Source of the DNA: Diadema antillarum
Taxonomy: Eukaryota
DNA length: 64,000 nucleotides
NCBI RefSeq assembly: GCF_040938485.1
Contig: NW_027272897.1
Coordinates: 1 to 64,000 of the forward strand
Reading direction: 5' to 3'
In this document: positions 17,882-53,119 of the stretch, piece by piece
Layout of the letters: every line of letters starts with the position of its first letter
Position numbering within the stretch: position 1 is the stretch's first letter
Program-made: the position numbers and the translations under genes
The notes under the pieces: model-generated
What the model saw: the letters and a program-made list of their open reading frames with translations, nothing else
Told to the model about the DNA's origin: nothing
The model's database searches: none

Positions 17882-18415
17882 TCAATATTTTTCATATGTT
17901 TTATAAGACGTGAAAGTCTTCGAAATCAGATATTCCTCAGAGATGTAACAAATGAGCGAAAGTATAAGGAACGCCATCATGCTGTAGAGTTTGTGTGAGA
18001 CGCAGATAACGCGTGGAATTGTGAGGGCGTATGATGCAGCGGAACCCACAGCCTGCCAGAGACGATAGTTGGCGAAGGCCGGCTCTTGAACATCTGGAAA
18101 CACAACTCCAACTATAGCTGTTGAAATATGGGAGTAAATGTGACAAAAAACGTGAGGAAAAATAATGTTCATTTTTTAAAAATGTCATCTAACTTTTGAA
18201 ATTTGACAACTTTGCAATGAGTATTGTGATTTGGAGTTTTGGTTGTTTATACACTACATCAGATTCGTGGGTATTGATAAAAAATTCACGTGACGTTACT
18301 CATCATCTTTCAAAACAAATTTAAACCTAGAGTATTGTGATAAAACATTTCTCGCTAATATTGTAAAGAAAAAGAATGTAGATGACCTACATACACACAC
18401 ACACGCACACACAAA

Positions 18416-18465
<50 letters not shown>

Positions 18466-21400
18466 CATATATATTACTTTAATGGACGAAATCTTTCTTG
18501 TATTTTTCGGAAGTATATGTCAGGAGTGTGGTGATATGTAAGATTTATTCACCAAGAAAGAAAGTTGTGAAAATTAAGGTATATATAGTATACACTTTTT
18601 TTTATTTGGGAGGAGGGTATGACGTAAGACACGCCAAGATCATGGTAGACTATAAGTGTGCTTACAATTTGCTTTGGGAAGATATCTTGCTACAGTGAAT
18701 CTCGAAGTTTCGTTAAAACATTTTTTGTTGAGATAATGAGAAACCTCTTATGAAATATGAAAGAGCATGTAATTCTATGATGAATTCAACATTTATTTGG
18801 TGAAAATTGGTTTTGAAATGGCTGAGATATCCAAAAAAGAGCGATTCTAATAAAGTGTGGGACCCACACTTTATTACGATCGCTTTGTTTTACTTTGTTT
18901 TTGGATGTTTCAGTCATTCCAAACCCAATTTTCATCAAATAAACTTTGAATTCCTCTTAAAATGGTATGCTCTGTGCTATATCATAAGTGTTTTCTTGGT
19001 ATCTCGCAAAAAGTTAAAAGCCCAATTCTCATCTCCACCAATACTGTACTATCCCTTTAAGGTACACTGTCTTATAGTAAAAGTTATTGGAACAGAATGC
19101 TTTACTCCAGGAAAGGTCAATCATGCAAAAATAATCGATATCGCGTTCCGGGGGATGGAGTACCATCAGTTATGTTACTAAAATTTTTAAATTCCTCTTC
19201 TCCGGCCATACCTGAATATCTAAAAGAGTATGTATATTGTATATTATACTCGCTTGATTGTCGATCATGGAGAATATTGGGGAAGGTGCTTAAAGCGACG
19301 ATGTATAGTTTTGGTTGAGATGGGGATTAAGGTTTTAACTCATTACCAGATTATCAAAAACCGCTTATATGAAATAATGTAGAGAATACAATTCTACGAG
19401 AAATTCAAAGTTTACTTGAAGAAAATTGATTTTAAAATTGCTGTGATATCCCAAAACAAAGAGGTCCTAATAAAAGTTGGGACTCACCTGTTATCAGGAT
19501 CACTTTGTTTTACTTGTTTGGGGATACATTAGCCATTTCAAAACCGACTTTCCTCAAATAACTTTGACTTCCTCCTAGAATTGTATGCTCTTTGGTATTT
19601 CACATAAGGGGTTTATAATTAACTGGCAAAGAGTTAAATCCTGAATCCCCATCTTAATCAAAACTATATCATCCCTTTAAGGAGCGATTCATCTTGAATA
19701 GACTTACATTGTATCTGGGTTTGCCACACGGCGTCTCCGACTCCCCATCCCATGGCTAACAACACCATCTGCCACATGGCCGAGGTGTGCGGGTTCCACA
19801 TCACGAAGATGACCATTAGGACCAAATGGAGGACACCGCCGAACATAAAGATAGCAATGCGACCAGTGTACTTCTCTAGCTGTCCGAAGATGACCGACGC
19901 CAGAGCGTCAAAGGCACCGTACGCTATCATGGTGTAGCCGACCATCCCTGACCCCTCTGTGCAGCTCACGTACGACTATATAAATCAAGGCAATGGTAAC
20001 AGGAACAACAAAGTATTAAACATTTTTTCTCCCAACTTCGTCTCTTGCTTTTCAAAATTTTGATGTCCTTTTTGCTTAAGCATTTTCTGACGCCTGTTCC
20101 TATAGTTTCATATGTTTGTGTACAGCTGTGGCTCTATCATTCGTGAGTCCCTATAGGGTAGTTACTGAATGACTCAACTGCCAATGTCGACAGACGAAAA
20201 CATACACGATATCTAGCTATGGACTGTAGTGTAGTGTTATAACGAATTGCAATTTGGTATTTCAAATAATCACCTTTAGATCTGCTCTGGTATAAAAGCA
20301 AGTCCAAATAAATAACATTAAGCACTAGGTTATTTATCATTACATTGCTTGTTTGTAAATTTGATTTGTTTTCTCCGTCTGAGTATTGCAGATACTCTAA
20401 ATTTTGCGTATCCCCTTTCTCTTCTATCAAATTTTGTGTATTCTGAGCAGATGTTTGTGACACTGGATTTATGAGTAAATTTCAAACGGTCGAATATATA
20501 TAGTTTTAGACAAAATGAAATATGGCTCCAAGGGGGCAGAAAGAGAATGCGATGTAACAGTTTCTGTAGGGTACAGGTTATATAACCACCCCCGGCCCCC
20601 AAGTGATTTCTGGGTACCTGTTTTATCATCATAGTCAAGGGCATTCCGGAAGGCCATTAACTCATGACTACTTCCTTTTGGTCAAATAGAGACGCACTGA
20701 TGGAAATGGTTGCAGTCCTTCAAGCTTTATTGTCATTGGTCACTTCCTTTATGTCTATAGACAATGAATGACCTCATTGACAGATTGATATACTTCCAAG
20801 TTAGGTAGTCTGTTAATACTGCCTGCAATATTATGTGTGTAATTATGTTGATGTCTATGCAGTTTGTAGCTTCTGTGAATGGAGAAAATTAGAAGACATC
20901 AATCTATTAAAAAAAAAATTGTCATGACTACAATCATCACTAAAGGTATGGTAGGCCTATACTTCATCCATGCAAAAATTTGTCAGGATTTTGCCATATA
21001 CATCTAGAGCAATAATGTTAACCCCATTATACGGTGAAAACGTTATACAGTATTTGGATATTGATTTTGTTCTCGACAAATACTTCAAAACTTCATCTAT
21101 TAATAGTGTTTTCAGATGTTACTTCTTTGCCAGTGGTTATACAGTTCCGGCGAATAAGCCAACAAAAAGCGCATAAAGATCAACTGAGGTCGGAGAGATC
21201 GAGAGATCATAGAAAACACGATTTAATTCTTGTCCTTGTTTGTGGGAAATAACACAGCAAGAGACCTTCGCCAGTAAACAATCATGTTCTAAAGATAGTT
21301 TACCTTCGTGAAATCTGCGCCTATGAACGCTTGTTCGACTCCACTGTAAATCATGATAGGAATGAGGAGTAACAAGTATGGAGATTTCATGAGATGAAAT

Positions 21401-22230
21401 GCAGATGTCAGGTGATCACGCACGTGACTCCAGTTGAATTTTTTATCCTCATCGTTCCCGTCGGGGATTCTGTCAAGGAGGAATGTCAAGACGACGATTG
21501 CTAGGAGACCGACTCCTACGTAGATGGAGATGAGAACTGATACTTGATTGTCCTTCGTCTTCGCTCCTCCTTCGATCGTGGTAAAATTGATGTTGCTACC
21601 GCAACTGTCACGACCACAATAATCTACTGAAACCGAGGTCGAATTGTTGGTCAGGACTACCGAGGAAATAGTGTTACCAATTACATGGCCAAATTTCAGG
21701 AAGCAGAAGAAGATGCCATTAAATCTATTGATGATGGTCTCTGGAACCCTGCCCGTGACGTCTGCTAGCTGGATGGCGGAGGTTGTGATGTATGTACTCA
21801 CTGCGGCCCAAAACGGCGACGCGGCAAGTCCCAGTAACCCGGCGGCAGGAATGAGTGTGTATGCCGCTGGGTAAAAATTAGCTGCCGAGTACAAGGCGTA
21901 GAAGAAACAGCAAACCACGAGCGTCCACTTAACTTTCAGCAGCCACACGACCAGGGGTGTGATAAAACTTGACAGGATAAGTCCTACATAGATGGCACAC
22001 AATGATCCGACCCCAATCCCAGCGTTGTAGTTTAGACTACTCTGTAGATTTGCAAGCGCGCCGTTTGCAATGAACGTCAGCATGAACGCGATGGAGACAA
22101 TGAGCAGGTTCTTCCAGTAGCGTAGTGGACTGAAGAGCTTCGGGTCACGACAACTGTCGATTGAATTCGACATTTCCGACGACGAATTATATGAACGACT
22201 GAACAGCGATGGCTTTTCCTCATTAACCAT
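17882..22230 (-). CDS. UNC93A: UNC-93-like MFS protein, copy 1 (intact, 3 exons, 476 aa)
   Basis: Exons 22230-21304 (AAG|gtaaac), 19975-19708 (tatag|TCG...CAAT|gtaagt) and 18117-17882 (caacag|CT...TGA). UNC-93 motifs: KNLLIVSIAF, LANLQSSLN, ANFYP, GLAASPFW, LLIPIMIYSGVEQAFIGADFT, GWGVGDAVWQTQ, EPAFANYRLWQ. Confidence 0.92.
18727..19060. mobile_element. TTAA-type palindromic MITE, left end eroded (same family as 19294-19676 and 29485-29849)
   Basis: Internal inverted repeat around aataaagtgtgggacccacactttatt; ends tactatccct|TTAA. Confidence 0.7.
19294..19676. mobile_element. TTAA-flanked palindromic MITE
   Basis: TTAA|agcgacgatgtatagttttggttgagatggggatt ... aatccccatcttaatcaaaactatatcatccct|TTAA. 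Confidence 0.8.
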
Positions 22231-22909
22231 AGTTAAAGTGATGGCTTATCTTCTTCTTCTTCTTCTTCTTTTTCTTCTTCTTTTCTCTGGAAAATTTTTG
22301 GTTCTTCTGTCGACATGATGTCAAAAACTAATGTGACGGTCTTATAAACAACTAGTGGCTGACCCGCGCACATTACGTTGTATTTCAGGAGTTGGAATGA
22401 AAAGTTCGCAAATCTACTCTCTTGGAACGGAGGACTACCCGGTCAGGCGTAAAGGGCAGATCAATGGATTTGTCATTGGATAGACTGACTAGAACTGATA
22501 GGCACAGATAATAACGTATAGGACCGAAGGTGATGGGGGATTAAAGGGTAGGACTGAAATCATGGAACTGCAGACGGGAAAAACATCGCTTTTAGTAACA
22601 ACGGTGAATGGTGGTACATGTATCGTGTGTCCAAAGTAAAATGAGATAAAACAAAACAAAGAATATATACATGTAAATGTATATATAAGTATTTGTATGT
22701 ATGTATGTATGTATGTATGTATGTATGTATGTATATAATATAGAGTGCAAGAAATTAGACTTGAGGCGGACGTTGTTCTCGATCTTGTTCTCCCTTTTAA
22801 TCGAGCTTTCGGCCTGTCTGATTTTTAATTTCTTTCACTATAACTATGCTACCCACAATGAGGCACCGCGTACATTTGGGACAGGAACGATCTCTCGCAC
22901 TATAATATA

Positions 22910-23949
22910 CACTCAGCAAAAAAAGTAAGTTCCCCCCTAACATTTTTGGACGTATCTCAAAATGTATTTTACGGATGTTCATAATTCGAACGGGAATGGA
23001 TAGGGAATTTCATTACTCTTAACATGAATGGCATATCATTGCCACCAGATATCATTATTGGTGTAAAAAATCGCATTTTATGTCAAAATGCATGGGAAAA
23101 AAAGTTGCACTTTAGGCCATAGAGAGCATATTGTATACATTTCCTATGTAAGTTATCAAATGATCTTTTTAAATTGTGTAATTCTCAGGAATTTCTTCAG
23201 GTACAATGTGCTTCCCTATTAAACAGATGTTATGCATACTTTTTGAACAATAGGCCTTCTCAATATGAAAATATTGGTAGAAGCCATGTGATTTGTAATT
23301 CCAATTCAGGTTGATCACATTAATGTGTCTGTGGGCATTTTGCATCATGCCCTCAAGTTGTACATCAGTTTGCTGAGGGAAATGGCATCGAATGTATGGA
23401 GTGGCCTGCAAGGTCCCCTGACTGTAATCCAGTAGAGAATCTTTGGGATATCATTAAGTGGAAAGCGAGCAAGAAGTTGAAAGATGACACTTCACTGCAA
23501 GAATTTCAGCGCATCTTGCAGAGAGCATGGACCAACATTGAGCAGCGCCAAGTACAAACTTTAGTTAACAGTATGAGGAGGAGATGGCGGCTGGTCATTG
23601 CGGGTGGTGGACATATCAATTATCAAATACTTCACTATATGCTCATGAAAAGAAAGAGATAGAGAAATATGCAATAACCCATGCTTAAATGTTCAGAATC
23701 ATGAGTGATTGTTTGATTATTTGTGTAAAAGTCATTGCAAATCACTAAAGTGCAACTTTTGTTTCCATGCATTTTGACATAAAATGCATTTTCCACACCA
23801 ATAATGATATCTGGTGGCAATGATTTGCCACTCATGTTATGAGTAATAAAATTCTTTATCCATTTCCGTTTGAATTATGAAAATCGGTTGAATACTTTTT
23901 GAGATATATCCACAAATGCTAGGGGGGAACTTACTTTTTTTGCTGAGTG
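22910..23949 (+). mobile_element. Tc1/mariner internal-deletion derivative (about 205-bp TIRs, TA TSD, transposase C-terminal remnant)
   Basis: TA|cactcagcaaaaaaagtaagttcccccc ... ggggggaacttactttttttgctgagtg|TA. The 23396-23662 ORF reads EWPARSPDCNPVENLW, the Tc1 WPxxSPDLNPIENLW motif. Confidence 0.92.
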
Positions 23950-24182
23950 TATATATATATATATATATATACATACATATATAGACTTGTTAATATTTTG
24001 ACCCTATTCATTTAAAACTTCCGAGAATGACGGATACGGGTATAGTTCTTGATGAGTGATTTGATGAGCAGAGGAGGGAAGACGGTGAAAAGTTACCTGG
24101 TCAAAATTTATCTTTTGTTGGTCTTTTTGTATTCTGTATAGGACAAACTTGGTAAGGGCTTGGTCACGGTACAGCTATTTGC

Positions 24183-24234
<52 letters not shown>

Positions 24235-24255
24235 GTGTGTGTGTGTGTGTGTGTG
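24183..24255. repeat. Compound (CT)n(GT)n microsatellite
   Basis: Direct reading. (TA)n arrays also occur at about 924-960, 15620-15662, 51650-51705 and 52021-52060. Confidence 0.95.
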
Positions 24256-25403
24256 CGCTTATTCCAGCGTTACATGACACAGTGTATTGTTTACCATTGG
24301 GAGCAGTGATTTAAGAATGAGTTTGAGTTATCATATTTGATGCACATGATTGTGTAGGTCAGTAGGTAGGATCACAAAACATCCTACATATGAAAAATTT
24401 GCAATAAAACCTAAAATGTAAGGAGATATCTCTATTTTTCTCAATAAATCATAACTGTAGACGGTTTATTCTAGAAACAAATTTATAACTCTTGTGCACA
24501 TTTTGTATACTTTACAATACTTAACATTGATTATATTGATTAACATTTTCACATTGGTTGTTTCTATGACTCACATTTGAGACCTATTTTGAAGAACTAT
24601 TAAAGCTCGATTTTTGTTTCATCTGCAAAATGGTATATAATGCCTTTAAAGTCACAATATCATCACGCTCATGGGATGATACCAAGCACAAATTGAGCTG
24701 GTATTCGCACACAAAGGTTGACGTCATTTTTGTCTCGTTTATCTTCGTTCTGTTCCTGTGTTTGTTGTTTGTTATAGTTTTTTTTTTTTCATGTGGGTAG
24801 TTGGGGTCAAGGTAAAGCTATACCGTATATCAGAGACTGGGATGGCTGGTAACTGAGGTCATTAAAGCGAAATATCTTTAGCACGACATGAAAATCGTGT
24901 CAGTCAAGCGCGATGGCGGGTGAAGATTGTACAGGTTATAGTAATCACGTAATGAAGGAGAAAGATGGTACTTAGTAGATTACAGAATCGATGTATTACG
25001 TGTATTTAGCCGCATGTGTAAATTAGATAGTTTAATAAGGTGTGCATCAGTGTCCTTATACATGTACACATAAAATATGACTTTGCTGAACGTATGTTTA
25101 ATATGTATACATGTTGAAGTTGAAGTTAATTGTCTATATTCACGTGTTTACATGGCATAATACAGTGTACATAACCAAAGACACATGCATGAAAAAGGTA
25201 CCAGGAAATAGCATGAATGCTAATCATGTCTGATACCTGTCTTATACAAGGTTCTTAAAAGGTAGTATTAAGTAAGATATTATGAATAGCATGAAACATG
25301 AACATACTTACAATTATTTACAGTAAAACATTTCAATTGAAAACTTGACATGATAATACATTTCCTGCTATACTTGTAATTAGCGGGTGGGTGTAAAGTG
25401 ATG

Positions 25404-25551
25404 NNNNNNNNNNNNNNNNNNNNNNNNNNNNNNNNNNNNNNNNNNNNNNNNNNNNNNNNNNNNNNNNNNNNNNNNNNNNNNNNNNNNNNNNNNNNNNNNN
25501 NNNNNNNNNNNNNNNNNNNNNNNNNNNNNNNNNNNNNNNNNNNNNNNNNNN
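25404..25551. other. Assembly gap (148 N)
   Basis: Run of N. Confidence 0.99.
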
Positions 25552-25809
25552 AGCCCACTCTCGATGTTTGTAGTATATGATGTACCTATAATTGTATTCG
25601 GTATTTTCATGCAGTATGATGTTTGTTACTACAGGGCGCCTTTGGAAAGCAGTTTTACGAAACTGAACAGGCCTTACTTTTACCCTGCAGTACAAAATAA
25701 ATAGATAAATAATGATATATAATTATTGATATCTATTTCTCAAATAGTCTCTTAGCCACTGGAGAGTTGTGCCTCTGACTCCAAACAGTGCTAATTCACT
25801 GCAAATTAT

Positions 25810-26114
25810 ATCATGCATGATTTATTGTATCAAATGCTTTCCAGATATCGATAAACACTCCTTGTGTTATTTTACCTTCGTTCAAGGATTTTGACATCTC
25901 ATTAGATAAACTAGCAAGAGACAGTTTTGTACTATTGTTTTTTTTTATTATTTACGAAAACCATATGCTGTTCATCATACAACAAATAATTAGTCTCAAT
26001 GAAATTTAGCAGCCTTTGATTGAATAATTTCTCAGAAACTTTCCCAGTGAGCGGTAAAACAGATATAGCTCGATGATTACTAGGAACATCCTTTTCATCT
26101 TTTTGTAAATACAC
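25810..26114 (-). mobile_element. Degenerate CR1/L2-group LINE reverse-transcriptase fragment
   Basis: KDVPSNHRAISVLPLTGKVSEKL...Q, then GVFIDIWKAFDTINH, matching the NYRPISLL...KxFEK and FxDxxKAFDTVxH RT motifs. Confidence 0.8.
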
Positions 26115-26661
26115 TTGTAGGCTTAATTATTGCAATCTTCATTCCTCCGTAAATTTCAACATCTGCTTTTTGAAAATAATCATGCTGCGTAGGTGTCACA
26201 TTAGCGGCTGTCCGAGACAGCGGCGTCGAGGAATATGTGCAGCTGCCGTTACCACCAAGAAACTTTGTAGGCCTACATACTCTCCTTCCAGTATTTGCTG
26301 TCTCAAGGTCAGAATGTCTCCAGGCTCCCATGTTTCAACAGTATGATTTGCTCATATCATATGTCATCGATGACGTTGTTACCATAACCGATATTGCTTC
26401 AAGCATTTATTCGGATCGTCAAAAGTGACAGACAAAAATGGAAGCGTTTGAAGGGATTTCTCACTTGTACATTATCAGCAAATTTATTGCAAGGAAAACG
26501 TTCATTTCTGTCTTTTTTTTTTAAATCGCTGCTACATAACTCAGGCTTTTCGTCTTTTCTCACAGTCGTAGGTGGAACTACATAAAAGATGCGTATACTT
26601 TATTGCGAAGGTTCGCCACGTTTTTGTACTTCTTCTCATCAGGAGGATGAAATACTAGTAG

Positions 26662-29600
26662 TCAATGATTGGATGGCCGTAAGAGGGCGTACTCCTCCAA
26701 GATGTAGCAAACAAGCGAAAATGTTAGTAAGGTCATCAGGCCATACAGTTTGCCTGAGACGCAGACGACGTGTGGAATGGCGAGTACATACGTCAAGGCG
26801 AAACCAAGAGCCTGCCATAGACGAAGGTTGGCAAACGCCGGCTCCTGTGCATCGGAGAACAGCACTCCAACCATTGCTTTGAAAGAGAGATAAGAATTGA
26901 TCAGAAATTAGAAACTACCTGTCAGCCATCTCGTCATTAGAAAACAACAAAGTTTATCTAACATACTGGGCAGATTTGAAAGTTGTCGAACTTTGCTGAA
27001 GGAGCTGTAATAAAAGATAAAATTAAAATTAAAAAAATGCCTTATTTTAAATTTTGTATGTTTTATTTAAAAGAGTACACAAACTTATACTCAACGGCAT
27101 ATAACACATGAAATATGAAGAAAATCTTATATCATGAAATAAATACAGTATACATTGAAGAAAACACAGCTTGGAAATGTTTAAAAAAATAGAGTAGCTT
27201 AATAATGACAAGGAAAATGTGAAAAATTAACGAAATTGGAACAAAATTATCACAACATCTAAATGTTCCAAGGTAAAACGACTGTTTGTATGGGTGAAGG
27301 TCACGAGTCCGACACCAACGAGTCACACAGCCCACGATTCATGCAGTCCACCTATACCTATTACAAGGTAAGTGAACAAGACCTATGACGAGTTCAATAC
27401 AGAGTAAAGTAGGCCCACGACCTGTTGGCCCAAATTCACGAAGGTGGTACAAATGAGACCATGATTTAAACCATGGACAAAAACAATGAAGCGCAAAGTG
27501 CTGCATGGAATATTTCGTTACGAAATCAGTCATTTCGTCGATGAAATGATTATTTTGTAACGAAATGACAACATTTTGTAACTAAATAAACATTTCATCC
27601 ACGAAATGATAATTTCGTTAACAAAAGGGTCATTTTGTCGACGAAATGACCAATTTCGTAACGAAATATTCCGTGCGACACTTGGCGCTCCATGGTTTTT
27701 GTCCATGGTTTAAACCATGGTTTCGTTTGTACCACGTTCGTGAATTCGGGTCATTTGGTCCACCAGCTCGACACTAAGCAAATAAGAGCCATGAACTTGA
27801 CACTAGACACAAAAGGTCCAAAAGACCGACATTACATCACGTAGTGTCGCCTTGTTCGCCTATGGTGTCGGACTCATGGGCCTTTTTTTGTGTGTGTATA
27901 GTGTGAAGCTCATGGGTTGTAGTTGTGGGCTGTATGACTCATGGACCCTTTTTTCAATGTCGAGCCCATGGGCCTATGACTCATAGGTGTGTAGGGCTCG
28001 TGGATGACCCCGTTTGTGGTTAGACTTTAATGATTTCGCTTTAAGCAGTGTCGTAAAAAGTGACTGAAAAGTAGTTATGCGGCCAACTAATTTACCCAAA
28101 TGATCAACATGTACATTCCTTACGCTTGCACTTCTATTTTACATAAACTTTTATGCAGGGATCTGCTATAGTTTTGAAGTCTTATTCCAAAATATATGCT
28201 GACGGTTTGTCATAACTATAACTTTCAGTTTGTTTTTGGCAAGTCTATCCGTCAAGGTCCATTGCGTGAAATTGATTGAACTGTAGGCATCTGTGGGTCT
28301 TTATGAGAAAAATAGATAACGATGGCATCTGCGAAAAAGTGAACTTTGAATGAATCGAATACAGAAGGAGAATTGATAATAAGGAACATAGATAACAGTT
28401 GATCTAGGATGTATCCCTGGGCAACTATTTAAGCGAAAGTGCCACTGATCACAATTTCGACCATTTTCTTGTTATTCACGAACTATTTTTAAAACCCATT
28501 TTACCTTTGGCTACATTATTGAGGCTGTCTGAAGCTGTCTGAAGTGATATCTCATCATGACATTTCATTATAGTGTTTAAGGTCCAACTCAACCTGAAGA
28601 AATGTTACTCCAATGAATTAAAAAAAGTTTCTATAAGCTGAATTACTGTGAACATGGTTGTTGAGAAAGAAGGGACGCTTACATTGCATCTGGGTTTGCA
28701 AGGCGGCGTCTCCGACTCCCCATCCCACCGACATCAAGATCAGGTTCCACATGGCCGAGGTGTGCGGGTTCCACACCTCAAAGACGATCATCAGAGCCAA
28801 GTGGAGGATGCCGCCAAAGATAAAGATGGCAATGCGACCAGTGTATTTCTCAAGGTGTCCGAAGATGACCGAAGCAAGAGCGTCGGCCCCGCCGTAGCCG
28901 ATCATGACGTAACCAACCATCCCTGGCCCCTGCGTGCAGCTCACGAACGACTGATAATACATTAGTGTGAGTTACAAGAAAAGCGAGTCGGACAATCAGC
29001 TACTAAGTCAAGAACGGTGTTTATCGATAGATAGATATAGATAGAAGGAAAAGAGTTTACTGCGCCATTTAATTCTTAGATTCGTATAATTATATGAAAA
29101 GTATACACTCCTTCGTCTTGTTACTGACATAATCACATTATCATTGAGAGGGTAATATTCCCCTGCCTTTTGAAAGATTTAAGTCAGGGGCTCTCTCATC
29201 ATGCTAGAAAAATTGAAATACGTTAAATGATCTTCATGTTTTCTGTATTTCGTCGGCAAATCCTGACGTCATGAATCAATGTAGTCTTCTTATCCAGCGA
29301 TGGCAGTGCCAAAACTTGATAATTTGAACCGATTGTCGGATTGTCATGAACCTTCACTGATGTGTTCTTTGATATTTCAACATTCCCTAAATCTACATAT
29401 TATACTTGTGTTGACGCTTCAATTACCTTGAAAGAGTAATTTCATCCTACAACTTTAATTCTGTGGTTGATACAATGATCTTGAGGGGATGGTACAGTTT
29501 GGGTTTAGACAAGGCTTGAGGTTTCCAACTTTTTTGTGACTATTTGTGCGTACGGTGTATGTGTGTTTGGGAAATGAATACAAACCTCTTATGACATATG

Positions 29601-31922
29601 AAAGAACATGTAATTCCTAGAGGGATTCAGTTTATTTGATGAAAAATGGCTTTGAAATGGCTGAGATATTAAAAAAGCGATCCTAATAAATTGTTTTTGG
29701 ATATCTCGGTCATTTCAAAACTGATCATACAAAGTTTCATCAAATAAACTTTTGATTCCCCTCAGAATTGTATGCTCTTTCACATTTCATAGAGTGGTTT
29801 CTAAACAATAAAGCTGAATTCTCACCTAAACTAGTACTTTATCATCCCTTTAAACGTATTCGCTCCACCATGCCCATGTTCACTGTATTATTAGAGCAGA
29901 GCAGTAGAACAGTAAAAGTTTCATCGATACTGGAATTGAAAAAGGAAGGTCACGGAAATTTGAATATCACTCCCTTTCGGTGCACCATAAAAGTTATGAT
30001 AATTATCATCAACTCACAGTAATCCCGATATTTGTGCACAAAAATCATTACAGTTACATTTCTGGTTAATAATTTATCTAATATACATTTATATACCCTG
30101 TAATGTTTCTTTAATCGAAGGGAACGGAAATGTGTTTACTGTTTGATATCATGTCAAACAGGAAAATGACTGGGCGAGGGTTAATGCGAGGTTTGTTGGG
30201 CCATCAGCTATCTCACATCTCTGTTGTCAAATTTTGGAACTGCTAAACTTTTGTCTCTGGTCCAATTTTGTATGTCTTCACACCATTCTGTTTGTTTGGT
30301 TTTTATGCAAAGATGTTGTCTTATGTTATCGTTGCTGAATTTCATCTCATCCTGCACAGAACTTTCCGCAAAATATTTCATGTAAAAAATTTTCCCCGTC
30401 TTGATCTACGAATTGCGAGGGACTAAATTAGACTATCAGGGCCGGCGCAATTTGCCAGCCGATTTTGGGACACACACTTACAAACTGTATTCCAAAATGT
30501 CTTCCCCTCCATCCTCAAAATGACTCAATGTAACTGTTCCCTAGGATAGACTTGGCCTCCTTACTATTAAAAAAAGAAGAAAAAAAAAACCAACCAAACA
30601 AACAAATAAACAAACAAACAAACAAAAAACCGTAGCGCCGGCCCTGACTATGATCATGACGATTATTAACCAAAGTATTCTACTGTTAAATAAAATTTAA
30701 ATATACATGTCGGCCTACTGCTCATATAATATAGTTAGATCGCTGTAATGTATCACATTTAAACAGATATGCAAATACAGTTGAAAAGAGTTTAAAATAC
30801 GGCTGTGTTCTAATAAAAACGTAGGCCCTACACTCTGTTCCACAAGTTTAATTTCAAGATTTATTTCAAATAATACCTGTGTGAAATCTGCGACAATAAA
30901 AGCTTGTTCAGCTCCGTTGTAGATCATGATGGGAATGAGACGCAATAAGTACGGAGATTTCATGAGATGCGTTGTAGATGTCAGGTGATCACACACGTGA
31001 CTAATTAGGTCGCCATTTTCCTGGTTACTCATCCGTGGGAGTCTGTCCAGGAGGAAAGTCAAGGTAGGAACTGCCAGGAGACCAATTCCTATATAGATGG
31101 AGAGGAGAACGGACACCTGTTTGTCTGGAACATGTCCTCCCCCTTTTGGAATGATAATATTAATGCCGCTACCGCAGCTGTCGCGGCCACAGTGATTCAT
31201 CGTAACGGCAGTCGACGTATCGTGGAGGACAAGTGAAGAGATGAGGTTGCCCCATACCTGAGCTAACCGAAAGAAACAGAAGAAAACGCCATTGAAGCGA
31301 TTGATTACTGTTTCGGGAACATCGTCCGTCACATGGGCTTGTTGGATGGCTGATGTCGTCATGTACGTACTCGCTGCGGCCCAAAATGGCGACCCAGCGA
31401 TACCCAGTAAAACTGCAGCAGGAATGAGTGTGTATGCCACTGGGTAGAAATTGGCTGCTGTATACAAGGCGTAGAAGAAACAGCAAACCACAAGCGTCCC
31501 CTTTACACTCAAAAGCCGCACAATCAAAGGTGTTATGAAACTAGAAAGGATAAGTCCAAGATACAGTGCAAAGAGTGACGCCACCCCAAGCCCAGAACTA
31601 TAGTTGAGACTACTTTGTAGATTTGCCAGAGCGCCGAAAGCACTCATTATTAGCATGAATGCAACGGAGACAACTATTAGGTTTTTCCAGTATCGTAGTG
31701 GACTAAATAATTGCAGGCAAGGAGGGCTGTTGGTTGAATTTGGCAACGTCCTAAACGACTTGCCAAAATTTGAAGGTCCGTCGCGTCCCAACAGCGACGA
31801 CTCTTCATCGTTGGCCATCGTAGACTCCGAGACATCGCCGTTGATGTTTTGTGATTCTTCTGACAATACAACTCGACTGTCTAGATTAATGTCATCTGGC
31901 CTACCTCTAGATTGTATGACAT
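26662..31922 (-). CDS. UNC93A: UNC-93-like copy 2 (frameshift 5' of TM1; likely translated from internal ATG 31818, or a pseudogene)
   Basis: Exons 31922(31818)-30877 (CAG|gtatta), 28950-28683 and 26876-26662; everything from 31866 onward is in frame. The ancestral ATG at 31922 is 5 nt out of register compared with copies 3 and 4 and reaches TAG at 31883-31881. Confidence 0.85.
27427..27752. mobile_element. About 325-bp palindromic element with central ATTTCGT..ACGAAATGA subrepeats, nested in a GACTCATGG-repeat element (about 27293-28015)
   Basis: Left arm ggcccaaattcacgaaggtggtacaaatgagaccatgatttaaaccatggacaaaaac matches the reverse complement of the right arm, gacccgaattcacgaacgtggtacaaacgaaaccatggtttaaaccatggacaaaaac. 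Confidence 0.8.
29485..29849. mobile_element. TTAA-type palindromic MITE (third copy of the 19.3-kb family)
   Basis: ttga|ggggatggtacagtt ... tactttatcatccct|TTAA; shares tttgaaatggctgagatat and gaattgtatgctcttt with the other copies. Confidence 0.7.
30437..30646. mobile_element. 210-bp hAT-like MITE with 12-bp TIRs and apparent 5-bp TSD
   Basis: ACTAT|cagggccggcgc ... gcgccggccctg|ACTAT. Confidence 0.75.
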
Positions 31923-32486
31923 CTTAAGAAAGCCCAAGGTTCAAGTAGACTCGACGTTAGATACTCGACCAGGTACTCCCTGGTACTTCAACTCTGAAAG
32001 ATTGTCACTTACACTCTTAGAGACTGACGTGTTGGATATATTCAAAATGGTATACATCAGTGCCGTTTCATCCTTTGAATCCCGGACACCATGAATCAAA
32101 AGATCACTTGAAAGGTCCCACTAGCGAAGTGGAATCAATCATCACAAAACAATTCTGTTTTGAAAACAAGACAACAATTAATGCGCACAAGATAATATTT
32201 TAGGAGTCCAGATATCAGTTTAATGTGCGGTAGTAGTCAATTAGCTGCTCGCACAGACAAGACGTCCAAATCGTTCCCCTACATACTAGGAATTCTAGCA
32301 CTGTGGAGCTATAGAGAGACACTCCAAAGTCGGTATGCGATTAATGCAATGCACAAACTGAATGAAAGTCGATGATCCATGCATGAGCAATATGATAATA
32401 TCCACGCACTTAATGTGTCCTCAGCGCAGTGCCACAACAGTTCATGTCATTTTTTTTTTTCATATCCACAAGTACCACAGCTCTAA

Positions 32487-33716
32487 AGGCCCTTCACACC
32501 TTTCCGGGCAAGCCTTTGAATACGTGAGACTTACGATAAACAATTTTTGCTATACCCGAAGGTTCCCGCAGAGGACCCGCATGTTTAGGCCCTGTCGCAC
32601 CTTTCAGGGCAAGCTACGCGGGCTTTTGCGTGTGGGGATTTTCCAACATGCGGGACATTTATTTTTTATCTATTTATTTATTTATTTATTTTTTGCGGGC
32701 AGACAAGGATTTTGGCGAGGTCCGCATGCGTCTTACTTGCTGGACCCGTGCTACTTAAGTTCTACTTACGTGCATTCCGTTTGACCTGCTTGTCAGGCGA
32801 ATGGATGTCGCATGAGTGAGGGCTGGCAACTCGATGAAGGAATCCCTCTGAAGGAATTTGATATGGCATAAGTCCCACAAAATGTCATTATTTTGACTGC
32901 AGCCGACTCTCAACAAAGAAGCAGAAAGTCAGTGACTGATCCTCAGGTCATTCCACGCCGCCAGAATTGACAAGTTACACGGATATTGGCAGTTTCGACA
33001 TCGTTCCTTGTTAGTAAAACACCCGTATTCAATGCTCGTAGAATCCCCGCAGATTACACGCACTTCCGGCGCATAAGAATGGATCCACGAACAACTTACG
33101 TACTTCAAGTGGGTCAACTGCCTGTTACTTGCGGCAGCTACGGATCTCCTACTGGCGTTCTTCGTGGACGTCTGCGGGCACTCTTCGCAACTCACCGGAA
33201 AAAAGTTTTGGTCATGCTCAAAACTTGGCTGCGGGTAGATCGGACTTGCGGCGTGCCATCTCCGGGTAACTACGGGCGAGATACGCGCTAGGTACTGCAA
33301 GTCAACCGCAAGTCAACACGCAAGGCTTCCTAAGATACGGTGTGACATTTAAGGCCTTCACCATGGTTAAAACTCGTTCCGGCTGAGTCGCGAGGGTTTG
33401 CCCACAGAGGTACACGCAGAACACCAGTAGGAGGTCCTTAGCGACAGCACCTCGCAAGCAACTCCCATGCTGGTAGGTCCTACTTCGCAACTGTAACGCA
33501 GGTACTCCGTAGTCCCCGTATGTCGCTCGTAATTGAAAACGGATCCGTTTCGAAGCTCTCACGCAGGTCACACGCAAGTAGCAGGTAAAATGCAAGTGTG
33601 AAACTCGCCAACATCCTTGTCCGCCAGCAGGAAAAAAAAAAAAAAACTCCTGCGTGCTAGAAAATCAGTACTCGCAACAAGCCCGCGAGGCTTGCCGGAA
33701 AGGTGTGACAGGGCCT
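32487..33716. mobile_element. Non-autonomous PIF/Harbinger-like element (1230 bp, TAA TSD)
   Basis: TAA|aggcccttcacacctttccgggcaagcct ... aggcttgccggaaaggtgtgacagggcct|TAA; the interior is GC-richer and has no recognisable ORF. Confidence 0.85.
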
Positions 33717-35114: not shown

Positions 35115-35697
35115 TTATAACCAAAACCCAAAGAGCAATGTGGATTGTGTGAAAGCAGCAACGTGAGTAGAACACATCAATTAACGTTTGCGGAAAATCG
35201 AACAATCAACGCAAAAGTATTTTATGTTCAAAGTTTTGGTGTTATATGACTGGATAAGTAGACTACTAGATCTCATGACGTCATGTGTGCACAACAATAT
35301 AAAGAAGATATACGGAGAATTCCACACACAAAAAACAATTGTTCTGAAAATTACACGTTCCATCAACTTGATACTGACATACATGTAATATGTTAAGGGC
35401 AGTAATTATTCCCCCTGCTTTCTGATAGCGGTTCGTAAAGTGCTCTTTAATTACGCTAGAAAATTTAAAGCTAGATGAATTTTCTTTATATTGTTGTGCA
35501 CCCATGATGTCATACACTAAAGTAGTCTCCTTATCCAGTGGTTCCAACACCAATTTTTTTTTTTTTTAAATTCCTAACTTTTGCATCGATTGTCCAATTT
35601 TCCTCAAACTTTCACTGACGTGCTCTACTAATGTTGCTGCTTTCACTTTTTCTCACATTCACTTCACATTTCTCTTTCGGTTTTGGTTTCCTTTAAT
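35115..35697. mobile_element. Degenerate TTAA-type MITE in the 3' flank of UNC93 copy 3
   Basis: aaccaaaacccaaagagcaatgtg...gtgaaagcagcaac at about 35115-35180 is inverted relative to about 35600-35697, which ends gtttcctttaa. Confidence 0.55.
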
Positions 35698-35732
35698 GCT
35701 TCTGTCCTGTCATTTTCTGGGGGAAAACTTAG

Positions 35733-48297: not shown

Positions 48298-50871
48298 TGT
48301 ACATGTATGTGCGTGTGTGTTTGTGTGTGTATATTTATAAAAACATGAAGAGTTCCTTTCCAAGCAGTCCTAAATGTTCTTTTGATGGTTAGGAGAAAAA
48401 GTGGATTTTTATTTAACACGCTTCTAAGTGTTTTCACCCAGCAATTTCATTTTTCATAATAATTGTAACACATAATGGCATAAGAAAATGTTCCTAGAAA
48501 AAAAATACGTGACTACTTGGATTTAAAAAGAAAAGGATTTTTTTAAATAACTTTGCGGATTTAACACCTTTTGGAACAAATATTTTAGCACAATGTTGCG
48601 TAGAGTGGAACTCGTAGGCCTTGTTTGCCTACTGTCAGACTCATGGACCTTATTTGTCTAGTGTCGGAGCTCATGGGTTGTATGGCTCGTGGGCTATATT
48701 TATGACTCATGGACCTTTCTTTGTCAATGGTGAACTCGTGGACGGTATGACTCGTGGGTGTCGGTCTAATGGGATGACCACACAAAATGTTGCCCAATCT
48801 ATCTCTATACAGTTAATCATGCATTTTGAATATCACTTCACAGAAACTTATGTACAAGGTGGTTAGTATCATTTTTAATCATGTATTGATTATTCATGTT
48901 CAGTCTGGGAATATTGTTTGGTCAAAAATAGAGATGTTCGTTTTTGTTTGCAAAAGAGGGCAGCACAATTCATGATATCAATCTCTGTCATGAAAGTAAA
49001 CTGTTAATGGAAATGAATACAGTCCCTAAAAAGAGAACGAATTATTTTTGTCGACAAATAAATGCATCCATGGCCTTGTCCCCACCTAAATGTATAAAAT
49101 TAACTTTTGACAGAAATGGTTTTGATACAAGAGCAGCTGATTCTTCTAATGCGGTACCACCATAGATGTGTTATCCTTGAGGGTATACCACCCAAACCGA
49201 ATATTGTCTGTTTTGATATACATGTAAGTGCTTTAGATATGCAGGAGATAAGATATTGAATTCGCTCCCAAATGTCATTAAGAAATCACAATCGCTACAA
49301 GCATTCAAAGCCTTATTATAAGAAAATGTATGCTTACTTTCACTGACTCATCATAAACGCCCTGATGTAGCAGAGATTCATTTACTCTTTTTTTTAACGT
49401 ACATTCTGTAGATTTTAACATGTTCAATAGCGGTAAATCATCTATTTTTTGTTTATATCATCATGCGCCTTCCATTAAGTATTTTAAAGGAAACCTCAGG
49501 AAGATTTTCGGAGTCTTAAATTTGAATAACTACAAACTGGTTAAACTGGGTACAGAATTTTAGAATTTATAGTGATCGGGTGAGGAATGAGAATGTTTTC
49601 GAAATTTACGACAAATCACAATGAACAAGGATGATGACATGGTAGCCTCACCATAAGCATACATGAGTGGGGACTCAAGGAAGCAGAACAAAATAAGAAA
49701 ACATGCATTACGCAGGTGAACTTGTTGAGAAAGCCGTATTGTGGTGGAATTACATTGCTGCGTTTCTGAATTAATGTGAGCGTCTATGTCATCATCCTTG
49801 TTCAATGTAATTTGTTTTGGCTTTTTAAGAGTATTAGTTTCTCCGATCAAGGACCTCACTAAATTCAATTCCACAAATCTATACATGGAGCTGTCGATTT
49901 ATATACATGATATTAATTATGAAAAATCGTCTGGAATTTCCCTTTAAGTATGTGCATGGGTAAACACTCAAGCTTGTTGTCTTGTGTGATACGTCTGCAT
50001 GGGTGGTGTGCACGTGCAAGAATGCTGGAATGTTTCGATTGGGTACAATATTTGTATTGTTGAGCTTGAATGGATGTGACTGTTTTTCATATTTATAGCC
50101 CCGACACACTATAGGTGAACGCGATTGTTGAATACATGTATTGAATCACTTTGCTTTGTTCCTCTAACAATGCCGTTTTTTTTCTATGTATATTATATAC
50201 GTTGTTATATTGACAGTATTTATACATTAACAAGCGTTTGGGAATTCAAGCGTTTGTAAGCTTTATTTTGCATTTGCTTTTAGTTGAATATGTGTCATGT
50301 TTTTAACAACAGTTTTGAATACACTTGTTTTAAATCTATATATTTCTTTCTAAGATTTCAATGTTTGGTTTTAAAATTGAATCACTGATTTCAGTAGAAC
50401 ATTTGTTATTCAAACTATTATTCAAATTACAATGTATCTCGATGTGAAATATTCGCTTGCTGATCTTGATATCCTGGTTAAAAAAAAGCCAAAATAAAGA
50501 AAAATAAAACCCCGAATGAAACTAAAAAAACACACTTTCATTAGGCTTTTATTAGAAAGACTCAATTTCAAGCCTGTCCGAATAGAAGTTAATTCTGATG
50601 ATGACATGATATGACACCTGAACAAAGACAGTTAATTCCCTTGATCTCATAACTCTTGTTGTTGTCAGTGACCTTAAATGTCAACGCTTCACCATGCTTG
50701 ATTTGACTGTTATGAGCAGAGTAATAATTATAATTAAAAAATCGTAAATGTTTCTTCGAAATTGGAAATGAAAAAAAAAGTCGTATAACTCTAGATAACC
50801 CCTTCCGTTTTACCAGAGATGCGTTTAGTTATCATCATAATCAGCTCATAATTCTTTCAAATCGTTTTGAG

Positions 50872-50903
<32 letters not shown>

Positions 50904-51648
50904 AAACTTGATTTATTATTTTTTTTTGGGGGGGATAATTAAGCAAGTATGTTCCTTTCTCTGATTTTTTTTTTACTTTTTATGTTACCGAAATAAACAC
51001 ATATTTATCGAAGAATATGAGTTTCCTTTTTGCTGTCATGTCAAAAAGGGATTTTAGTCAAGAATTGGGCCATTTGTTAACGAGAGATTTGTGAGACCAT
51101 GACATCATCAGCTAATTCATTGGCATATTTGCTGTTCAAAGATGTCAGATTTTACAATCCCATTACTTTCTAATTCAACATACGATATCAAAATGTCTTC
51201 ATATAATTCCGTTTGTTTTCCTTTAGTAGGGGACGATGTTATATAGTGCTTTTAAGTTCATCTTGAACTAAATCAATTGAGACTATGTAGTGAGATCTTC
51301 TAAGGTAATGGCTAGCCTAAACAACTCTAATACCGTCAAACTCATCGAAAGCGTTTGAACAATATTTTAGGATGACTTAAACGGAATACTATCTTGTAAA
51401 TGATATAACTTTTCTCTTTCTTTATCTACGGATTACAAGGGACTTTAAATCAGACAATCACTATATCTTATTCCAATCAAATCAAATACTTACAATATTT
51501 GTTTCTAATCACGTAATGACTTTCGATTGTAACATCTATGTCTATTAGAAAATATAATATCGAGTAGCGTTTCAAACATACTTGTGTTTGGAAATAACGT
51601 GCACTTTGCTGGACAAGTGAGATGTAACATTTCAAAGATTATATATGT

Positions 51649-51709
<61 letters not shown>

Positions 51710-52017
51710 TAAACTTTGAGAAAAGAAATGGGTTTTCATCGGGATTCGAACCCGAGACCTCCGGATTACTAGACCGGTGCTCTACCGACTGAGCTATTGA
51801 AAGCCCTAGATCGGTGTTCGTCCCAAACCCTTAACTCTCTTTGCTCGTGTGGTCAGAAGCTATAGTGTGTGTATCTAGGGCTTTCAATAGCTCAGTCGGT
51901 AGAGCACCGGTCTAGTAATGCGGAGGTCTCGGGTTCGAATCCCGATGAAAACCCATTTTCTTTGCTCAAAGTTTTCACTATTTATTATTTGTTTCTGGTC
52001 AGTTTTCCCTTCCTTGT

Positions 52018-52064
<47 letters not shown>

Positions 52065-53119
52065 AATACATGTACCTGTGTGAAATCTGCGCTAATGAAA
52101 GCTTGCTCAGCGCCAGAATAGATCATGATGGGAATAAGAAGCAACAAGTACGGAGACCTCATGAGACGAAATAAAGACGTTAGGTGATCATAAACTTGAT
52201 TCCTCGGGGCCCCGTTCTCCTCCTGATTACTCTTCACTGGGAGTCTGTCCAGGAGGAAAGTCAAGATAGCCACTGCCAGGAGACCAATTCCTATATAGAT
52301 GGAGAGGAGAACGGACACCTGTTTGTCTGGAACATGTCCTCCCCCTTTTGGAATGATAACATTAATGCCGCTACCGCAGCTGTCGCGACCACAGTGCTCC
52401 ATGATCGTTACAGCAGTCGACGTCTCGTGGAGGACGAGTGAAGAGATGAGGTTACCCCATACCTGAGCTGACCGACAGAAACAGAAGAAGATTCCATTGA
52501 AGCGATTAATAACGGTTTCGGAAACGTCATCCGTCACATCAGCTAGTTGGATGGCTGATGTCGTTACATACGTATTCGCTGCCGCCCATAACGGCGATGC
52601 GGCAAGTCCCAGTAACCCTGCGGCAGGAATGAGTGTGTACACCTCTGGGTAGAAATTGGTTGCTGTATACAAGACGTAGAAGAAACAGCAAACCACAAGC
52701 GTCCGCTTTACACTTAAAAGCCACACAATAAATGGCGTTACGAAACTCGATAGGATAAGTCCAACGTACAGAGCAAAGAGTGACGCCACACCCAGCCCAG
52801 AACTAGAGTTGAGACTACTTTGTAAATTTGCCAGAGCGCCGAAGGCACTCATTGTTAGCATGAATGCAACGGAGACAACTATTACGTTTTTCCAGTATCG
52901 TAGTGGACTAAATAGTTGAGGGCAATGAGGGCTGTTAGTTGAATTTGGCAACGTCCTAAGCGACTTGCCAAATTTCGACGGACTTTCGCACCCAAGCAGC
53001 GACGACTGTTCATCGTTGGCCATCGTGGACTCCGAGACATCATCGTTGTTTTGTGATTCTTCTGACAATACAACACGATCGTCTAGATGAATGTCATCGG
53101 GTGTCGGACTGTACGACAT
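43265..53119 (-). CDS. UNC93A: UNC-93-like copy 4; last exon interrupted by a transposon (500 aa as disrupted, 508 aa ancestral)
   Basis: Exons 53119-52076 (CAG|gtacat), 47995-47728 and 46674-46504, then the insertion, then 43308-43265 (YIFMEYALLRLSRR*). 171+44 = 215 nt, equal to exon 3 of copies 2 and 3. Reading into the TIR gives LVCSQNSYT* with the stop at 46484. Confidence 0.9.
43514..43730 (+). pseudogene. Degenerate THAP-domain remnant inside the P-like element
   Basis: MPYCAAVNCTN (THAP M-P-x-C-x-x-x-x-C start) ending AG|gtaagt. Downstream, in another frame, FPK and VCRRH occur with intervening stops. No intact ORF. Confidence 0.45.
44050..45170. repeat. About 4 diverged tandem units (roughly 200-330 bp) inside the P-like element
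   Basis: Recurring gtatgttttcacactc, aagtgaaatctt, gcatttgctttc and gtgttcatt motifs. Confidence 0.7.
45559..45709. repeat. About 150-bp imperfect hairpin
   Basis: acagaaaccaatttcatgttgatcaccaacaatttatttg...ttgagcgattcgc pairs with gcaaatcgctcaa...aaataaattgtcggtgattagcatgaactcgatttctgt. Confidence 0.75.
47197..47665 (-). mobile_element. Dimer of tRNA-derived SINE-like family B (267-bp period) with a 14-bp flanking direct repeat
   Basis: Near-identical about 200-bp units; tRNA-like heads at 47363-47294 and 47630-47561 (TGGTCTAGTGG A-box, GGTTCGAATCC B-box); AAGTTATTTTCTAT at 47183-96 and 47666-79. Confidence 0.85.
48600..48782. repeat. GACTCATGG/CTCGTGG subrepeat element fragment (same family as 27860-28015)
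   Basis: Shared gactcatggacc, gctcatgggttgta and ggatgacc motifs. Confidence 0.65.
51705..51980. mobile_element. Back-to-back palindrome of two family-A tRNA(Thr)-like heads around a 63-bp spacer
   Basis: Arms 51705-51810 and 51874-51980 are near-perfect reverse complements; tRNA-like 51806-51730 (-) and 51878-51954 (+), both with a CTAGTAA loop. Confidence 0.9.

What the first reader, a model, noticed from the sequence alone, without database searches (positions are those of the whole stretch)
17882..53119. Tandem UNC-93-like (UNC93A) array caught in birth-and-death evolution
Seen: four co-oriented paralogues with identical exon phases (0,1) and a 268-nt exon 2, in four different states (intact, frameshifted 5' end, intact, TE-split last exon), plus an orphan exon. 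Copies 2-4 share about 500 bp of upstream sequence; copy 1 is divergent in N-terminus and promoter. Established: UNC-93 family members are MFS-fold proteins. C. elegans UNC-93 regulates the SUP-9 K2P channel, UNC93B1 chaperones endosomal TLRs, and vertebrate UNC93A is single copy. Inference: a lineage-specific expansion, possibly tied to solute transport or to expanded innate-immune receptor repertoires.
Basis: partly seen in the sequence, partly recalled or inferred. Interest (0 to 1): 0.72.

Follow-up and report, generated by a model that had tools for sequence, protein, structure and literature searches.

The report
Sea-urchin UNC93A-like tandem gene array
[quoted passage not shown] The individual's two chromosome copies carry different broken versions of the three youngest genes, which is a clear but ordinary case of a gene family gaining and losing members.

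Summary
The window (Diadema antillarum, contig C2009) holds four minus-strand, three-exon UNC-93 family genes. Their intron phases are 0 and 1, and exon 2 is 268 nt. There is also one dead exon-2 relic. All four models equal RefSeq 'unc-93 homolog A-like' proteins.

A fifth, slowly evolving copy lies just past the window end.

The 1.75-Gb assembly keeps both haplotypes, so the whole array is present a second time on contig C890 (94-99% identical, collinear). Comparing the two shows that every lesion is allele-specific:
- Haplotype A has the +5-nt frameshift in copy 2 and a 3.2-kb transposon in copy 4.
- Haplotype B has a 2-kb Transib-like insertion in copy 2 and an 8-nt deletion in copy 3.
- Copies 1 and 5 are intact on both.

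D. setosum shares copies 1, 3, 4 and 5 one-to-one and shares the relic. It lacks copy 2, and it has an extra duplicate and a pseudogene. Strongylocentrotus and Lytechinus returned only one gene of this clade.

dN/dS is 0.06 for copy 5 and about 0.22-0.25 for the others.

Birth-and-death evolution is supported. An immune link is not. RNA evidence could not be obtained. The assembly gap is intergenic. The scan had not noted this array on other DNA.

The parts
17882..22230 (-). Copy 1 (c1). Exons are 21304-22230, 19708-19975 and 17882-18117. It encodes 476 aa and is intact on both haplotypes. It has a short, divergent N-terminus and sits on a long branch.
   Evidence: equals P0007; tree; dN/dS 0.23 against the D. 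setosum orthologue P0121
25404..25551 (.). Assembly gap of 148 N. It is intergenic, between the c2 stop and the c1 start.
   Evidence: the flanks are collinear with haplotype B, where they lie 2940 bp apart. The letters were not read. No UNC-93 match falls in that interval.
26662..31922 (-). Copy 2 (c2). Exons are 30877-31922, 28683-28950 and 26662-26876. On this haplotype a net +5-nt change at 31904-31909 stops the frame of the original ATG (31922) at codon 14. The ATG at 31818 gives 474 aa.
   Evidence: equals P0003. Haplotype B has the unshifted 5' end.
35733..38581 (-). Copy 3 (c3). Exons are 37538-38581, 36866-37133 and 35733-35947. It encodes 508 aa and is intact on this haplotype.
   Evidence: equals P0001. 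AlphaFold model with 12 transmembrane helices, pTM 0.77.
40502..40662 (-). Orphan exon-2 relic. It covers about 60% of an exon 2, carries indels, and has no exon 1 or exon 3 nearby.
   Evidence: An orthologous relic lies upstream of the c3-type genes of D. setosum.
43265..43316 (-). Displaced original end of the last exon of copy 4. It encodes ...YIFMEYALLRLSRR and the stop, and includes one copy of the 8-bp target duplication.
   Evidence: It matches the intact haplotype-B allele and D. setosum P0005.
43317..46503 (.). Non-autonomous DNA transposon of 3187 bp. It has perfect 28-nt terminal inverted repeats and an 8-bp target duplication, TGTTTGCT. It is present on this haplotype only.
   Evidence: At least 27 full-length copies at 94-98% identity lie elsewhere in the genome.
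46484..53119 (-). Copy 4 (c4). Exons are 52076-53119, 47728-47995 and 46484-46674. The CDS runs 20 nt into the transposon, so the last 14 residues are replaced by SQNSYT and the product is 500 aa.
   Evidence: equals P0004. The haplotype-B allele is an intact 507 aa (equals P0126).

Best explanation
This is a tandem family of five UNC93A-type genes of Diadema antillarum. Four of them and one exon relic lie in the window.

What the genes encode. Each encodes a 12-helix membrane protein of the major facilitator superfamily (MFS) fold.

How the family arose. It grew by repeated unequal duplication of a three-exon gene. That growth came after the Diadema lineage left the lineage of Strongylocentrotus and Lytechinus, from which the searches returned only one such gene.

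Current state of the copies:
- c5 keeps the ancestral form and is strongly constrained.
- c1 to c4 are still under purifying selection on their membrane helices. They are about four times more relaxed overall, mostly in the N-terminal tail and two loops.

Turnover continues:
- D. setosum has duplicated a c4-relic-c3 block and let one c3-type copy decay.
- c2 exists only in D. antillarum.
- In the sequenced individual, three of the five genes carry a disruptive allele on one or both haplotypes. Two of these lesions are recent transposon insertions.
- Short gene-conversion tracts are overlaid on this pattern.

Function (inferred, not shown). By homology with Drosophila CG4928/UNC93A, and with C. 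elegans UNC-93 (the latter from general knowledge), these proteins would act in ion and solute homeostasis. They could do so as transporters or as partners of two-pore potassium channels, and the extra copies would be partly redundant.
For: - Family and fold: Pfam PF05978. AlphaFold model with pTM 0.77, whose best structural match is UNC93B1 (TM 0.74), followed by other MFS transporters.
- UNC93A affinity.
- Five copies per haplotype: every UNC-93 match comes in a pair on two contigs. C2009 and C890 are collinear at 94-99% identity. The published paper says this 1.75-Gb assembly retains both haplotypes (PMC13511894).
- Allele-specific lesions.
- D. setosum array and synteny as far as CDC50.
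- Tree.
- dN/dS: c5 0.056; c1 0.23; c3 0.22; c4 0.25. dS between c2 and c3 is 0.36, against 0.15-0.22 between orthologues. By region, the helices give 0.09-0.24 and the tails and loops 0.3-1.7.
- Gene conversion.
- Single gene in other urchins.
- CG4928 function: PMC7591606.
Against: - Transcription of each copy therefore rests on RefSeq models only.
- The two small indels rest on one assembly at about 11x coverage per haplotype, although they are not homopolymer errors.
- RefSeq gives the same 474-aa c2 protein on C890 despite the 2-kb insertion I see there. No GT-AG intron could remove that insertion, and I cannot explain the discrepancy.
- 'Single copy in camarodonts' rests on annotated proteins in the searched collection, not on a genome scan.
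- The biochemical function of UNC93A is unsettled even in model animals.
Confidence: 0.85

Rival explanations
1. The repeated genes are an assembly artefact: haplotypes or collapsed reads laid side by side, not true paralogues.
For: The assembly does retain both haplotypes.
Against: The haplotype copy is a separate contig (C890) carrying the whole array again. Within one contig the copies differ by 10-35% in protein and have dS of 0.36 to about 1. Each has its own orthologue in the chromosome-level D. setosum assembly.
Confidence: 0.02
2. The lesions are sequencing or assembly errors, and all five genes are intact and fixed. On this reading the array is stable and is not turning over.
For: Coverage is only about 11x per haplotype. 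RefSeq models an undisrupted c2 protein on both contigs.
Against: The two insertions have clean target-site duplications, inverted ends and many copies elsewhere in the genome. The +5-nt and -8-nt changes are not homopolymer slips. D. setosum independently shows a pseudogene, relics and an extra duplicate.
Confidence: 0.07
3. The similarity among c2-c4 reflects concerted evolution by gene conversion rather than birth-and-death, so the copy ages inferred from dS are meaningless.
For: Conversion-like tracts exist. D. setosum c3-type and c5-type are 100% identical over 120 nt, against 45-80% elsewhere. D. antillarum c2 and c3 are 97-98% identical in exon 2. c2 resembles c4 at alignment positions 721-900.
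Against: The copies group by orthology across the two species, not by species (support 98-100). The tracts are short.
Confidence: 0.08
4. The expansion is an adaptive innate-immune innovation. The extra UNC93A copies would chaperone the very large sea-urchin Toll-like receptor repertoire, as UNC93B1 does in vertebrates.
For: The only support is the shared fold with UNC93B1, plus general knowledge that echinoids have many TLR genes.
Against: The proteins are UNC93A-type, not UNC93B1-type. Camarodont urchins, known for their large TLR repertoires, returned only one gene of this clade. No dN/dS value above 1 is sustained over a region of useful size. No co-location with immune genes was seen; the neighbour is CDC50.
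Confidence: 0.04

Closest known systems
Vertebrate UNC93A and Drosophila CG4928 (putative atypical solute carrier, MFS fold)
   Same: They are the best sequence relatives outside echinoderms, at 38-43% identity over about 78% of exon 1. They share Pfam PF05978 and the 12-helix MFS fold. CG4928 affects potassium balance and membrane potential and co-localises with TASK1 channels (PMC7591606).
   Different: Here there are five tandem copies instead of one, and a three-exon structure with a 0.9-1.0-kb first exon. There is a long, disordered and variable N-terminal tail. The loop between helices 5 and 6 is variable but carries a conserved CGRxSCG motif. No functional data exist.
UNC93B1 (trafficking chaperone of endosomal Toll-like receptors; PDB 7C76, 7C77)
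   Same: It belongs to the same Pfam family and is the best structural match (TM-score 0.74; E 6e-16 by Foldseek, 7e-24 by sequence).
   Different: Identity is only 22-24%, and the array proteins are much closer to UNC93A. UNC93B1's role with TLRs cannot be transferred on this evidence.
Birth-and-death evolution of tandem gene families (the Nei and Rooney model, as for MHC, immunoglobulin and olfactory-receptor genes)
   Same: There is orthology across species, together with lineage-specific duplicates, pseudogenes, exon relics and segregating null alleles.
   Different: The family is small (five genes) and of unknown physiological role. Some gene conversion is superimposed.
Other tandem gene arrays noted in this same genome by the scan (SRCR/Ig, phytochelatin-synthase-like, sulfotransferase, SGNH esterase)
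   Same: They show the same general pattern of local tandem expansion in D. antillarum.
   Different: The gene families are different and unrelated. Here the second haplotype was used to show that the lesions are allelic.

Membership tests
UNC-93 family (Pfam PF05978) | Significant match to the family profile above the curated cut-off | tested here: met
   Exon 1 of all four copies scores 63-78 bits against a cut-off of 22.9. Five matches per haplotype lie over the cut-off in the whole genome.
UNC-93 family (Pfam PF05978) | 12-helix major facilitator superfamily fold | tested here: met
   The AlphaFold model of c3 has pTM 0.77 and 12 long helices. Foldseek ranks UNC93B1 first, then VMAT, GLUT and other MFS transporters.
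UNC93A subfamily | Closer to UNC93A than to UNC93B1 | tested here: met
   Identity to vertebrate UNC93A is 38-43% (E about 1e-55). Identity to UNC93B1 is 22-24% (E 7e-24).
UNC93A subfamily | Placement inside the UNC93A clade in a tree that also holds MFSD11, UNC93B1 and C. elegans UNC-93 | not tested
   No tool supplied sequences of MFSD11, UNC93B1 or nematode UNC-93. The tree holds only UNC93A-like proteins.
UNC93A subfamily | Regulation of, or association with, two-pore potassium channels, or a transport activity | not testable with these tools
   This needs electrophysiology or transport assays.
Birth-and-death gene family | Paralogues group by orthology between species rather than by species | tested here: met
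   c1, c3, c4 and c5 each pair with a D. setosum gene at 98-100% support.
Birth-and-death gene family | Lineage-specific gains and losses, pseudogenes or relics | tested here: met
   D. setosum has the extra duplicate P0123, a c3-type pseudogene and two exon relics. c2 is found only in D. antillarum. The relic is shared between the species. Disruptive alleles are present in c2, c3 and c4.
hAT or P superfamily (the element in c4) | 8-bp target duplication plus terminal inverted repeats and a matching transposase | tested here: inconclusive
   The 8-bp duplication and perfect 28-nt inverted ends are present. No open reading frame longer than 87 aa is present, and no transposase was available for comparison, so the superfamily is not settled.

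The most novel reading that the evidence does not exclude
The disruptive alleles of c2, c3 and c4 might not be neutral decay. They could be a maintained presence/absence polymorphism of partly specialised UNC93A copies. That would give a variable transporter or channel-regulator repertoire under balancing or pathogen-driven selection, in a species that has passed through two mass die-offs.
Probability: 0.05. Interest if true: 0.65.

Novelty: new member of a known kind. Interest (0 to 1): 0.3.

Why it matters
UNC93A is a poorly understood membrane protein found across animals, usually in one or two copies. A five-gene array holds one conservative copy and four relaxed copies. Natural knock-out alleles of three of the genes are already present, and they distinguish the two haplotypes of one animal. 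This gives a natural series for asking which parts of the protein tolerate change and whether the copies are redundant.

It is also a practical warning for this genome. The public 1.75-Gb assembly holds both haplotypes, so a 'pseudogene' seen on one contig may be only one allele. Beyond that, it is an ordinary lineage-specific tandem expansion, and its genes are already annotated in RefSeq.

Tried and rejected
- Sequencing runs. I asked look-up of sequencing runs for runs holding copy 2, to test expression, splicing and heterozygosity.
- Exon-2 motif hits. Hits at window 61964 and 3181 looked like further relics. The 61964 hit proved to be a chance match when read; the 3181 hit was not read.
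- Origin of c2. I tried to decide whether c2 was lost in D. setosum or gained in D. antillarum by aligning the c3-to-c1 interval. Only the part next to c1 aligns and there is no clean junction, so this stays undecided. The dS values and the tree favour an origin before the species split.
- Second UNC-93 locus (contigs C18 and C604). I tried to identify it through the solved-structure library. One exon gave no UNC93B1 match, and tblastn shows only about 30% identity to UNC93A-like proteins. Its subfamily is unresolved.
- Literature. A search for UNC93A in sea urchins found nothing relevant.
- Spliced models. Full-length searches used database proteins that proved identical to the models.
- Assembly gap. 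The letters that correspond to the gap on the other haplotype were neither printed nor examined.
Full report
**What is in the window.**
The window is the first 64 kb of a 272-kb contig (C2009) of Diadema antillarum. Four stretches on the minus strand match Pfam PF05978 (UNC-93) far above the curated cut-off. They are repeats of one another at 62-91% nucleotide identity.

Reading the junctions shows the same structure in every copy:
- The first exon is long (927-1046 nt) and ends after a Lys/Gln codon followed by GT.
- The second exon is exactly 268 nt, between AG and GTAAG.
- The last exon starts after an AG in phase 1.

The spliced translations, built in scripts only, are identical to four RefSeq proteins named 'protein unc-93 homolog A-like'.

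**The assembly gap.**
The N run at 25404-25551 lies between the stop of copy 2 and the start of copy 1, so no reading frame crosses it. Both flanks align, in order and orientation, to the second haplotype, where they are 2940 bp apart. The gap length is therefore only nominal. I did not read the corresponding letters. The genome-wide UNC-93 search found no family match in that interval.

**The states of the copies.**
- Copy 1 is open (476 aa).
- Copy 3 is open (508 aa).
- Copy 2 has TAGAGG at 31904-31909 where its allele has C, a net +5 nt. The frame from the original ATG (31922) then stops at codon 14. The next in-frame ATG (31818) gives the 474-aa RefSeq protein.
- Copy 4's last exon is interrupted after the codon for Cys494 by a 3187-bp element (43317-46503). 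The element has perfect 28-nt inverted ends and an 8-bp target duplication. The displaced exon end, still readable, is at 43265-43316. The element has no long reading frame. It belongs to a young family with at least 27 full-length copies at 94-98% identity.
- An exon-2 relic sits at 40502-40662.

A genome-wide search finds a fifth array member just beyond the window, at C2009 64084-67568. It is intact at 508 aa and equals P0125.

Every UNC-93 match in the genome comes in a pair on two contigs. C2009 and C890 are collinear at 94-99% identity over the whole array. The published description of this 1.75-Gb assembly states that it retains both haplotypes of one male, with 84.4% duplicated BUSCOs and a haploid size of about 0.7-0.9 Gb (PMC13511894; preprint).

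Comparing the two haplotypes changes the picture, because every lesion is allelic:
- Haplotype B lacks the +5-nt change in copy 2.
- Haplotype B lacks the transposon in copy 4, so its allele is an intact 507 aa and equals P0126.
- Haplotype B has a 2.0-kb element in the last exon of copy 2, with CACAGTG termini and a 5-bp target duplication, as in Transib elements.
- Haplotype B has an 8-nt deletion in the last exon of copy 3 that shifts the frame from about residue 480.
- Copies 1 and 5 are intact on both haplotypes.

I mapped the lesions on an AlphaFold model of copy 3 (pTM 0.77; helix 12 spans 477-507; residues 1-66 are disordered):
- The copy-2 frameshift costs only part of the disordered tail.
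- The copy-4 insertion removes the last 14 residues, which are the end of helix 12 and the C-terminal tail.
- The copy-3 deletion removes helix 12.
- The copy-2 insertion on haplotype B removes helices 11 and 12.

**Comparison with other urchins.**
The D. setosum chromosome carries, in gene order:
1. a c5-type gene (P0006);
2. a c4-type gene (P0005);
3. an exon-2 relic;
4. an uncalled c3-type pseudogene with frameshifts and no last exon;
5. a second c4-type gene (P0123);
6. a second relic;
7. a c3-type gene (P0002);
8. 10 kb without any copy;
9. a c1-type gene (P0121);
10. CDC50.

The c4-to-c3 spacer of D. antillarum, relic included, aligns to both D. setosum spacers. So D. setosum duplicated a c4-relic-c3 block and then lost one c3-type copy, and the relic predates the species split. 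No trace of copy 2 is found in D. setosum.

In a maximum-likelihood tree the Diadema proteins form one clade (support 97/98). That clade is sister to the single gene of S. purpuratus, L. variegatus and L. pictus. Inside it, c5 branches first on a short branch. Next comes c1 on a long branch, and then c2, c3 and c4. c1, c3, c4 and c5 each pair with a D. setosum orthologue. A search with the S. purpuratus protein found no second camarodont paralogue down to E 1e-60.

**Selection.**
Values are Nei-Gojobori estimates between the two species.

| Comparison | dN/dS | dS |
|---|---|---|
| c5 orthologues | 0.056 | 0.21 |
| c1 orthologues | 0.23 | 0.15 |
| c3 orthologues | 0.22 | 0.22 |
| c4 orthologues | 0.25 | 0.21 |
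| c2 vs c3 | 0.21 | 0.36 |
| D. setosum duplicates (P0005 vs P0123) | 0.48 | 0.10 |

The c2-c3 dS of 0.36 exceeds the orthologue range, so c2 is probably older than the species split.

By region, the helices of c1-c4 give 0.09-0.24. The N-terminal tail, the helix 5-6 loop and the central loop give 0.3-1.7, on few sites. c5 is constrained almost everywhere. The derived copies are therefore real genes with relaxed loops and tails, not long-dead pseudogenes. Short tracts of near-identity between otherwise diverged copies show some gene conversion.

**What it is and how it probably works.**
The proteins are MFS-fold members of the UNC-93 family and belong to the UNC93A side of it. The only functional guide is homology. 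Drosophila CG4928/UNC93A is needed for renal potassium and water balance, alters membrane potential, and sits next to TASK1 channels (PMC7591606). From general knowledge, C. elegans UNC-93 regulates the SUP-9 two-pore channel.

I therefore infer, without direct evidence, a role in ion or solute homeostasis. One conserved copy would do the ancestral job and four partly redundant copies would be free to vary or be lost.

Nothing supports a Toll-like-receptor link. The proteins are not UNC93B1-type, and urchins famous for their large TLR repertoires returned only one gene of this clade.

**Limits.**
- RefSeq lists the same 474-aa copy-2 protein on C890. Yet I see a 2-kb insertion there that no GT-AG intron could remove. 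This is unexplained.
- UNC93B1, MFSD11 and nematode UNC-93 could not be put in the tree.

**Verdict.**
The thing itself is a lineage-specific tandem expansion of an already annotated gene family. It is ordinary in kind, with a neat added result: the 'four states' are heterozygous alleles.

Noticed in passing
G000:C2009:64084-67568 (L027; just beyond the window end): This is the fifth array member, c5: 508 aa, intact on both haplotypes, and the most conserved copy (dN/dS 0.056). It is the closest Diadema copy to the single gene of other urchins.
   Followed up: yes
L022:5810-7805 (G000:C890:1163810-1165805): On the second haplotype a 2.0-kb element splits the last exon of copy 2. It has termini beginning CACAGTG, imperfect inverted ends of about 36 nt and a 5-bp target duplication, CGGCG. 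This is the signature of Transib transposons, whose ends resemble V(D)J recombination signals. No long reading frame is present.
   Followed up: partly
window 39130-39972: An 843-bp element with 26-nt inverted ends (TAGGGGAGAGCGGGG...) lies about 550 bp upstream of the copy-3 ATG. It is present on this haplotype only, and is absent from haplotype B and from D. setosum.
   Followed up: partly
window 17640-17800: The end of copy 1's last exon and its 3' flank are repeated in tandem about 180 bp downstream of the real one, in diverged form.
   Followed up: no
window 36059-36133, 36385-36459, 47291-47365, 47558-47632, 51730-51804, 51880-51954: tRNA-like heads of SINE-type repeats lie in and around the introns of copies 3 and 4. 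The pair at 47.3/47.6 kb sits in a 267-bp tandem duplication (47190-47668), and about 470 bp of that stretch has no counterpart on haplotype B.
   Followed up: no
L029/L030 (D. setosum OZ188189.1), codon-alignment nt 721-900: The c3-type gene (P0002) and c5-type gene (P0006) of D. setosum are 100% identical over 120 nt and 92% over the next window, against 45-80% elsewhere. This looks like a recent gene-conversion tract.
   Followed up: partly
G000:C18:4944321-4955302 and G000:C604:1237052-1247143 (L011-L020): A second, multi-exon UNC-93 family gene is present once per haplotype. It is only about 30% identical to the array proteins, and one tested exon gave no UNC93B1 match. Its subfamily (MFSD11-like or UNC-93 proper) is unresolved.
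   Followed up: partly
G000:C890, copy 2 (RefSeq XP_071508076.1): RefSeq gives the same 474-aa protein for copy 2 on both contigs. The C890 allele nevertheless has an open upstream ATG and a 2-kb insertion in its last exon.
   Followed up: no
window 23396-23662: An 88-aa open frame with a Tc1/mariner-like transposase C-terminus (…PDCNPVENLW…) lies in the spacer between copies 1 and 2.
   Followed up: no
window 49642-52021 and 60402-63880: Two further stretches specific to haplotype A (2.4 kb in intron 1 of copy 4, and 3.5 kb between copies 4 and 5) have no counterpart on haplotype B. Structural heterozygosity in this region is high.
   Followed up: no
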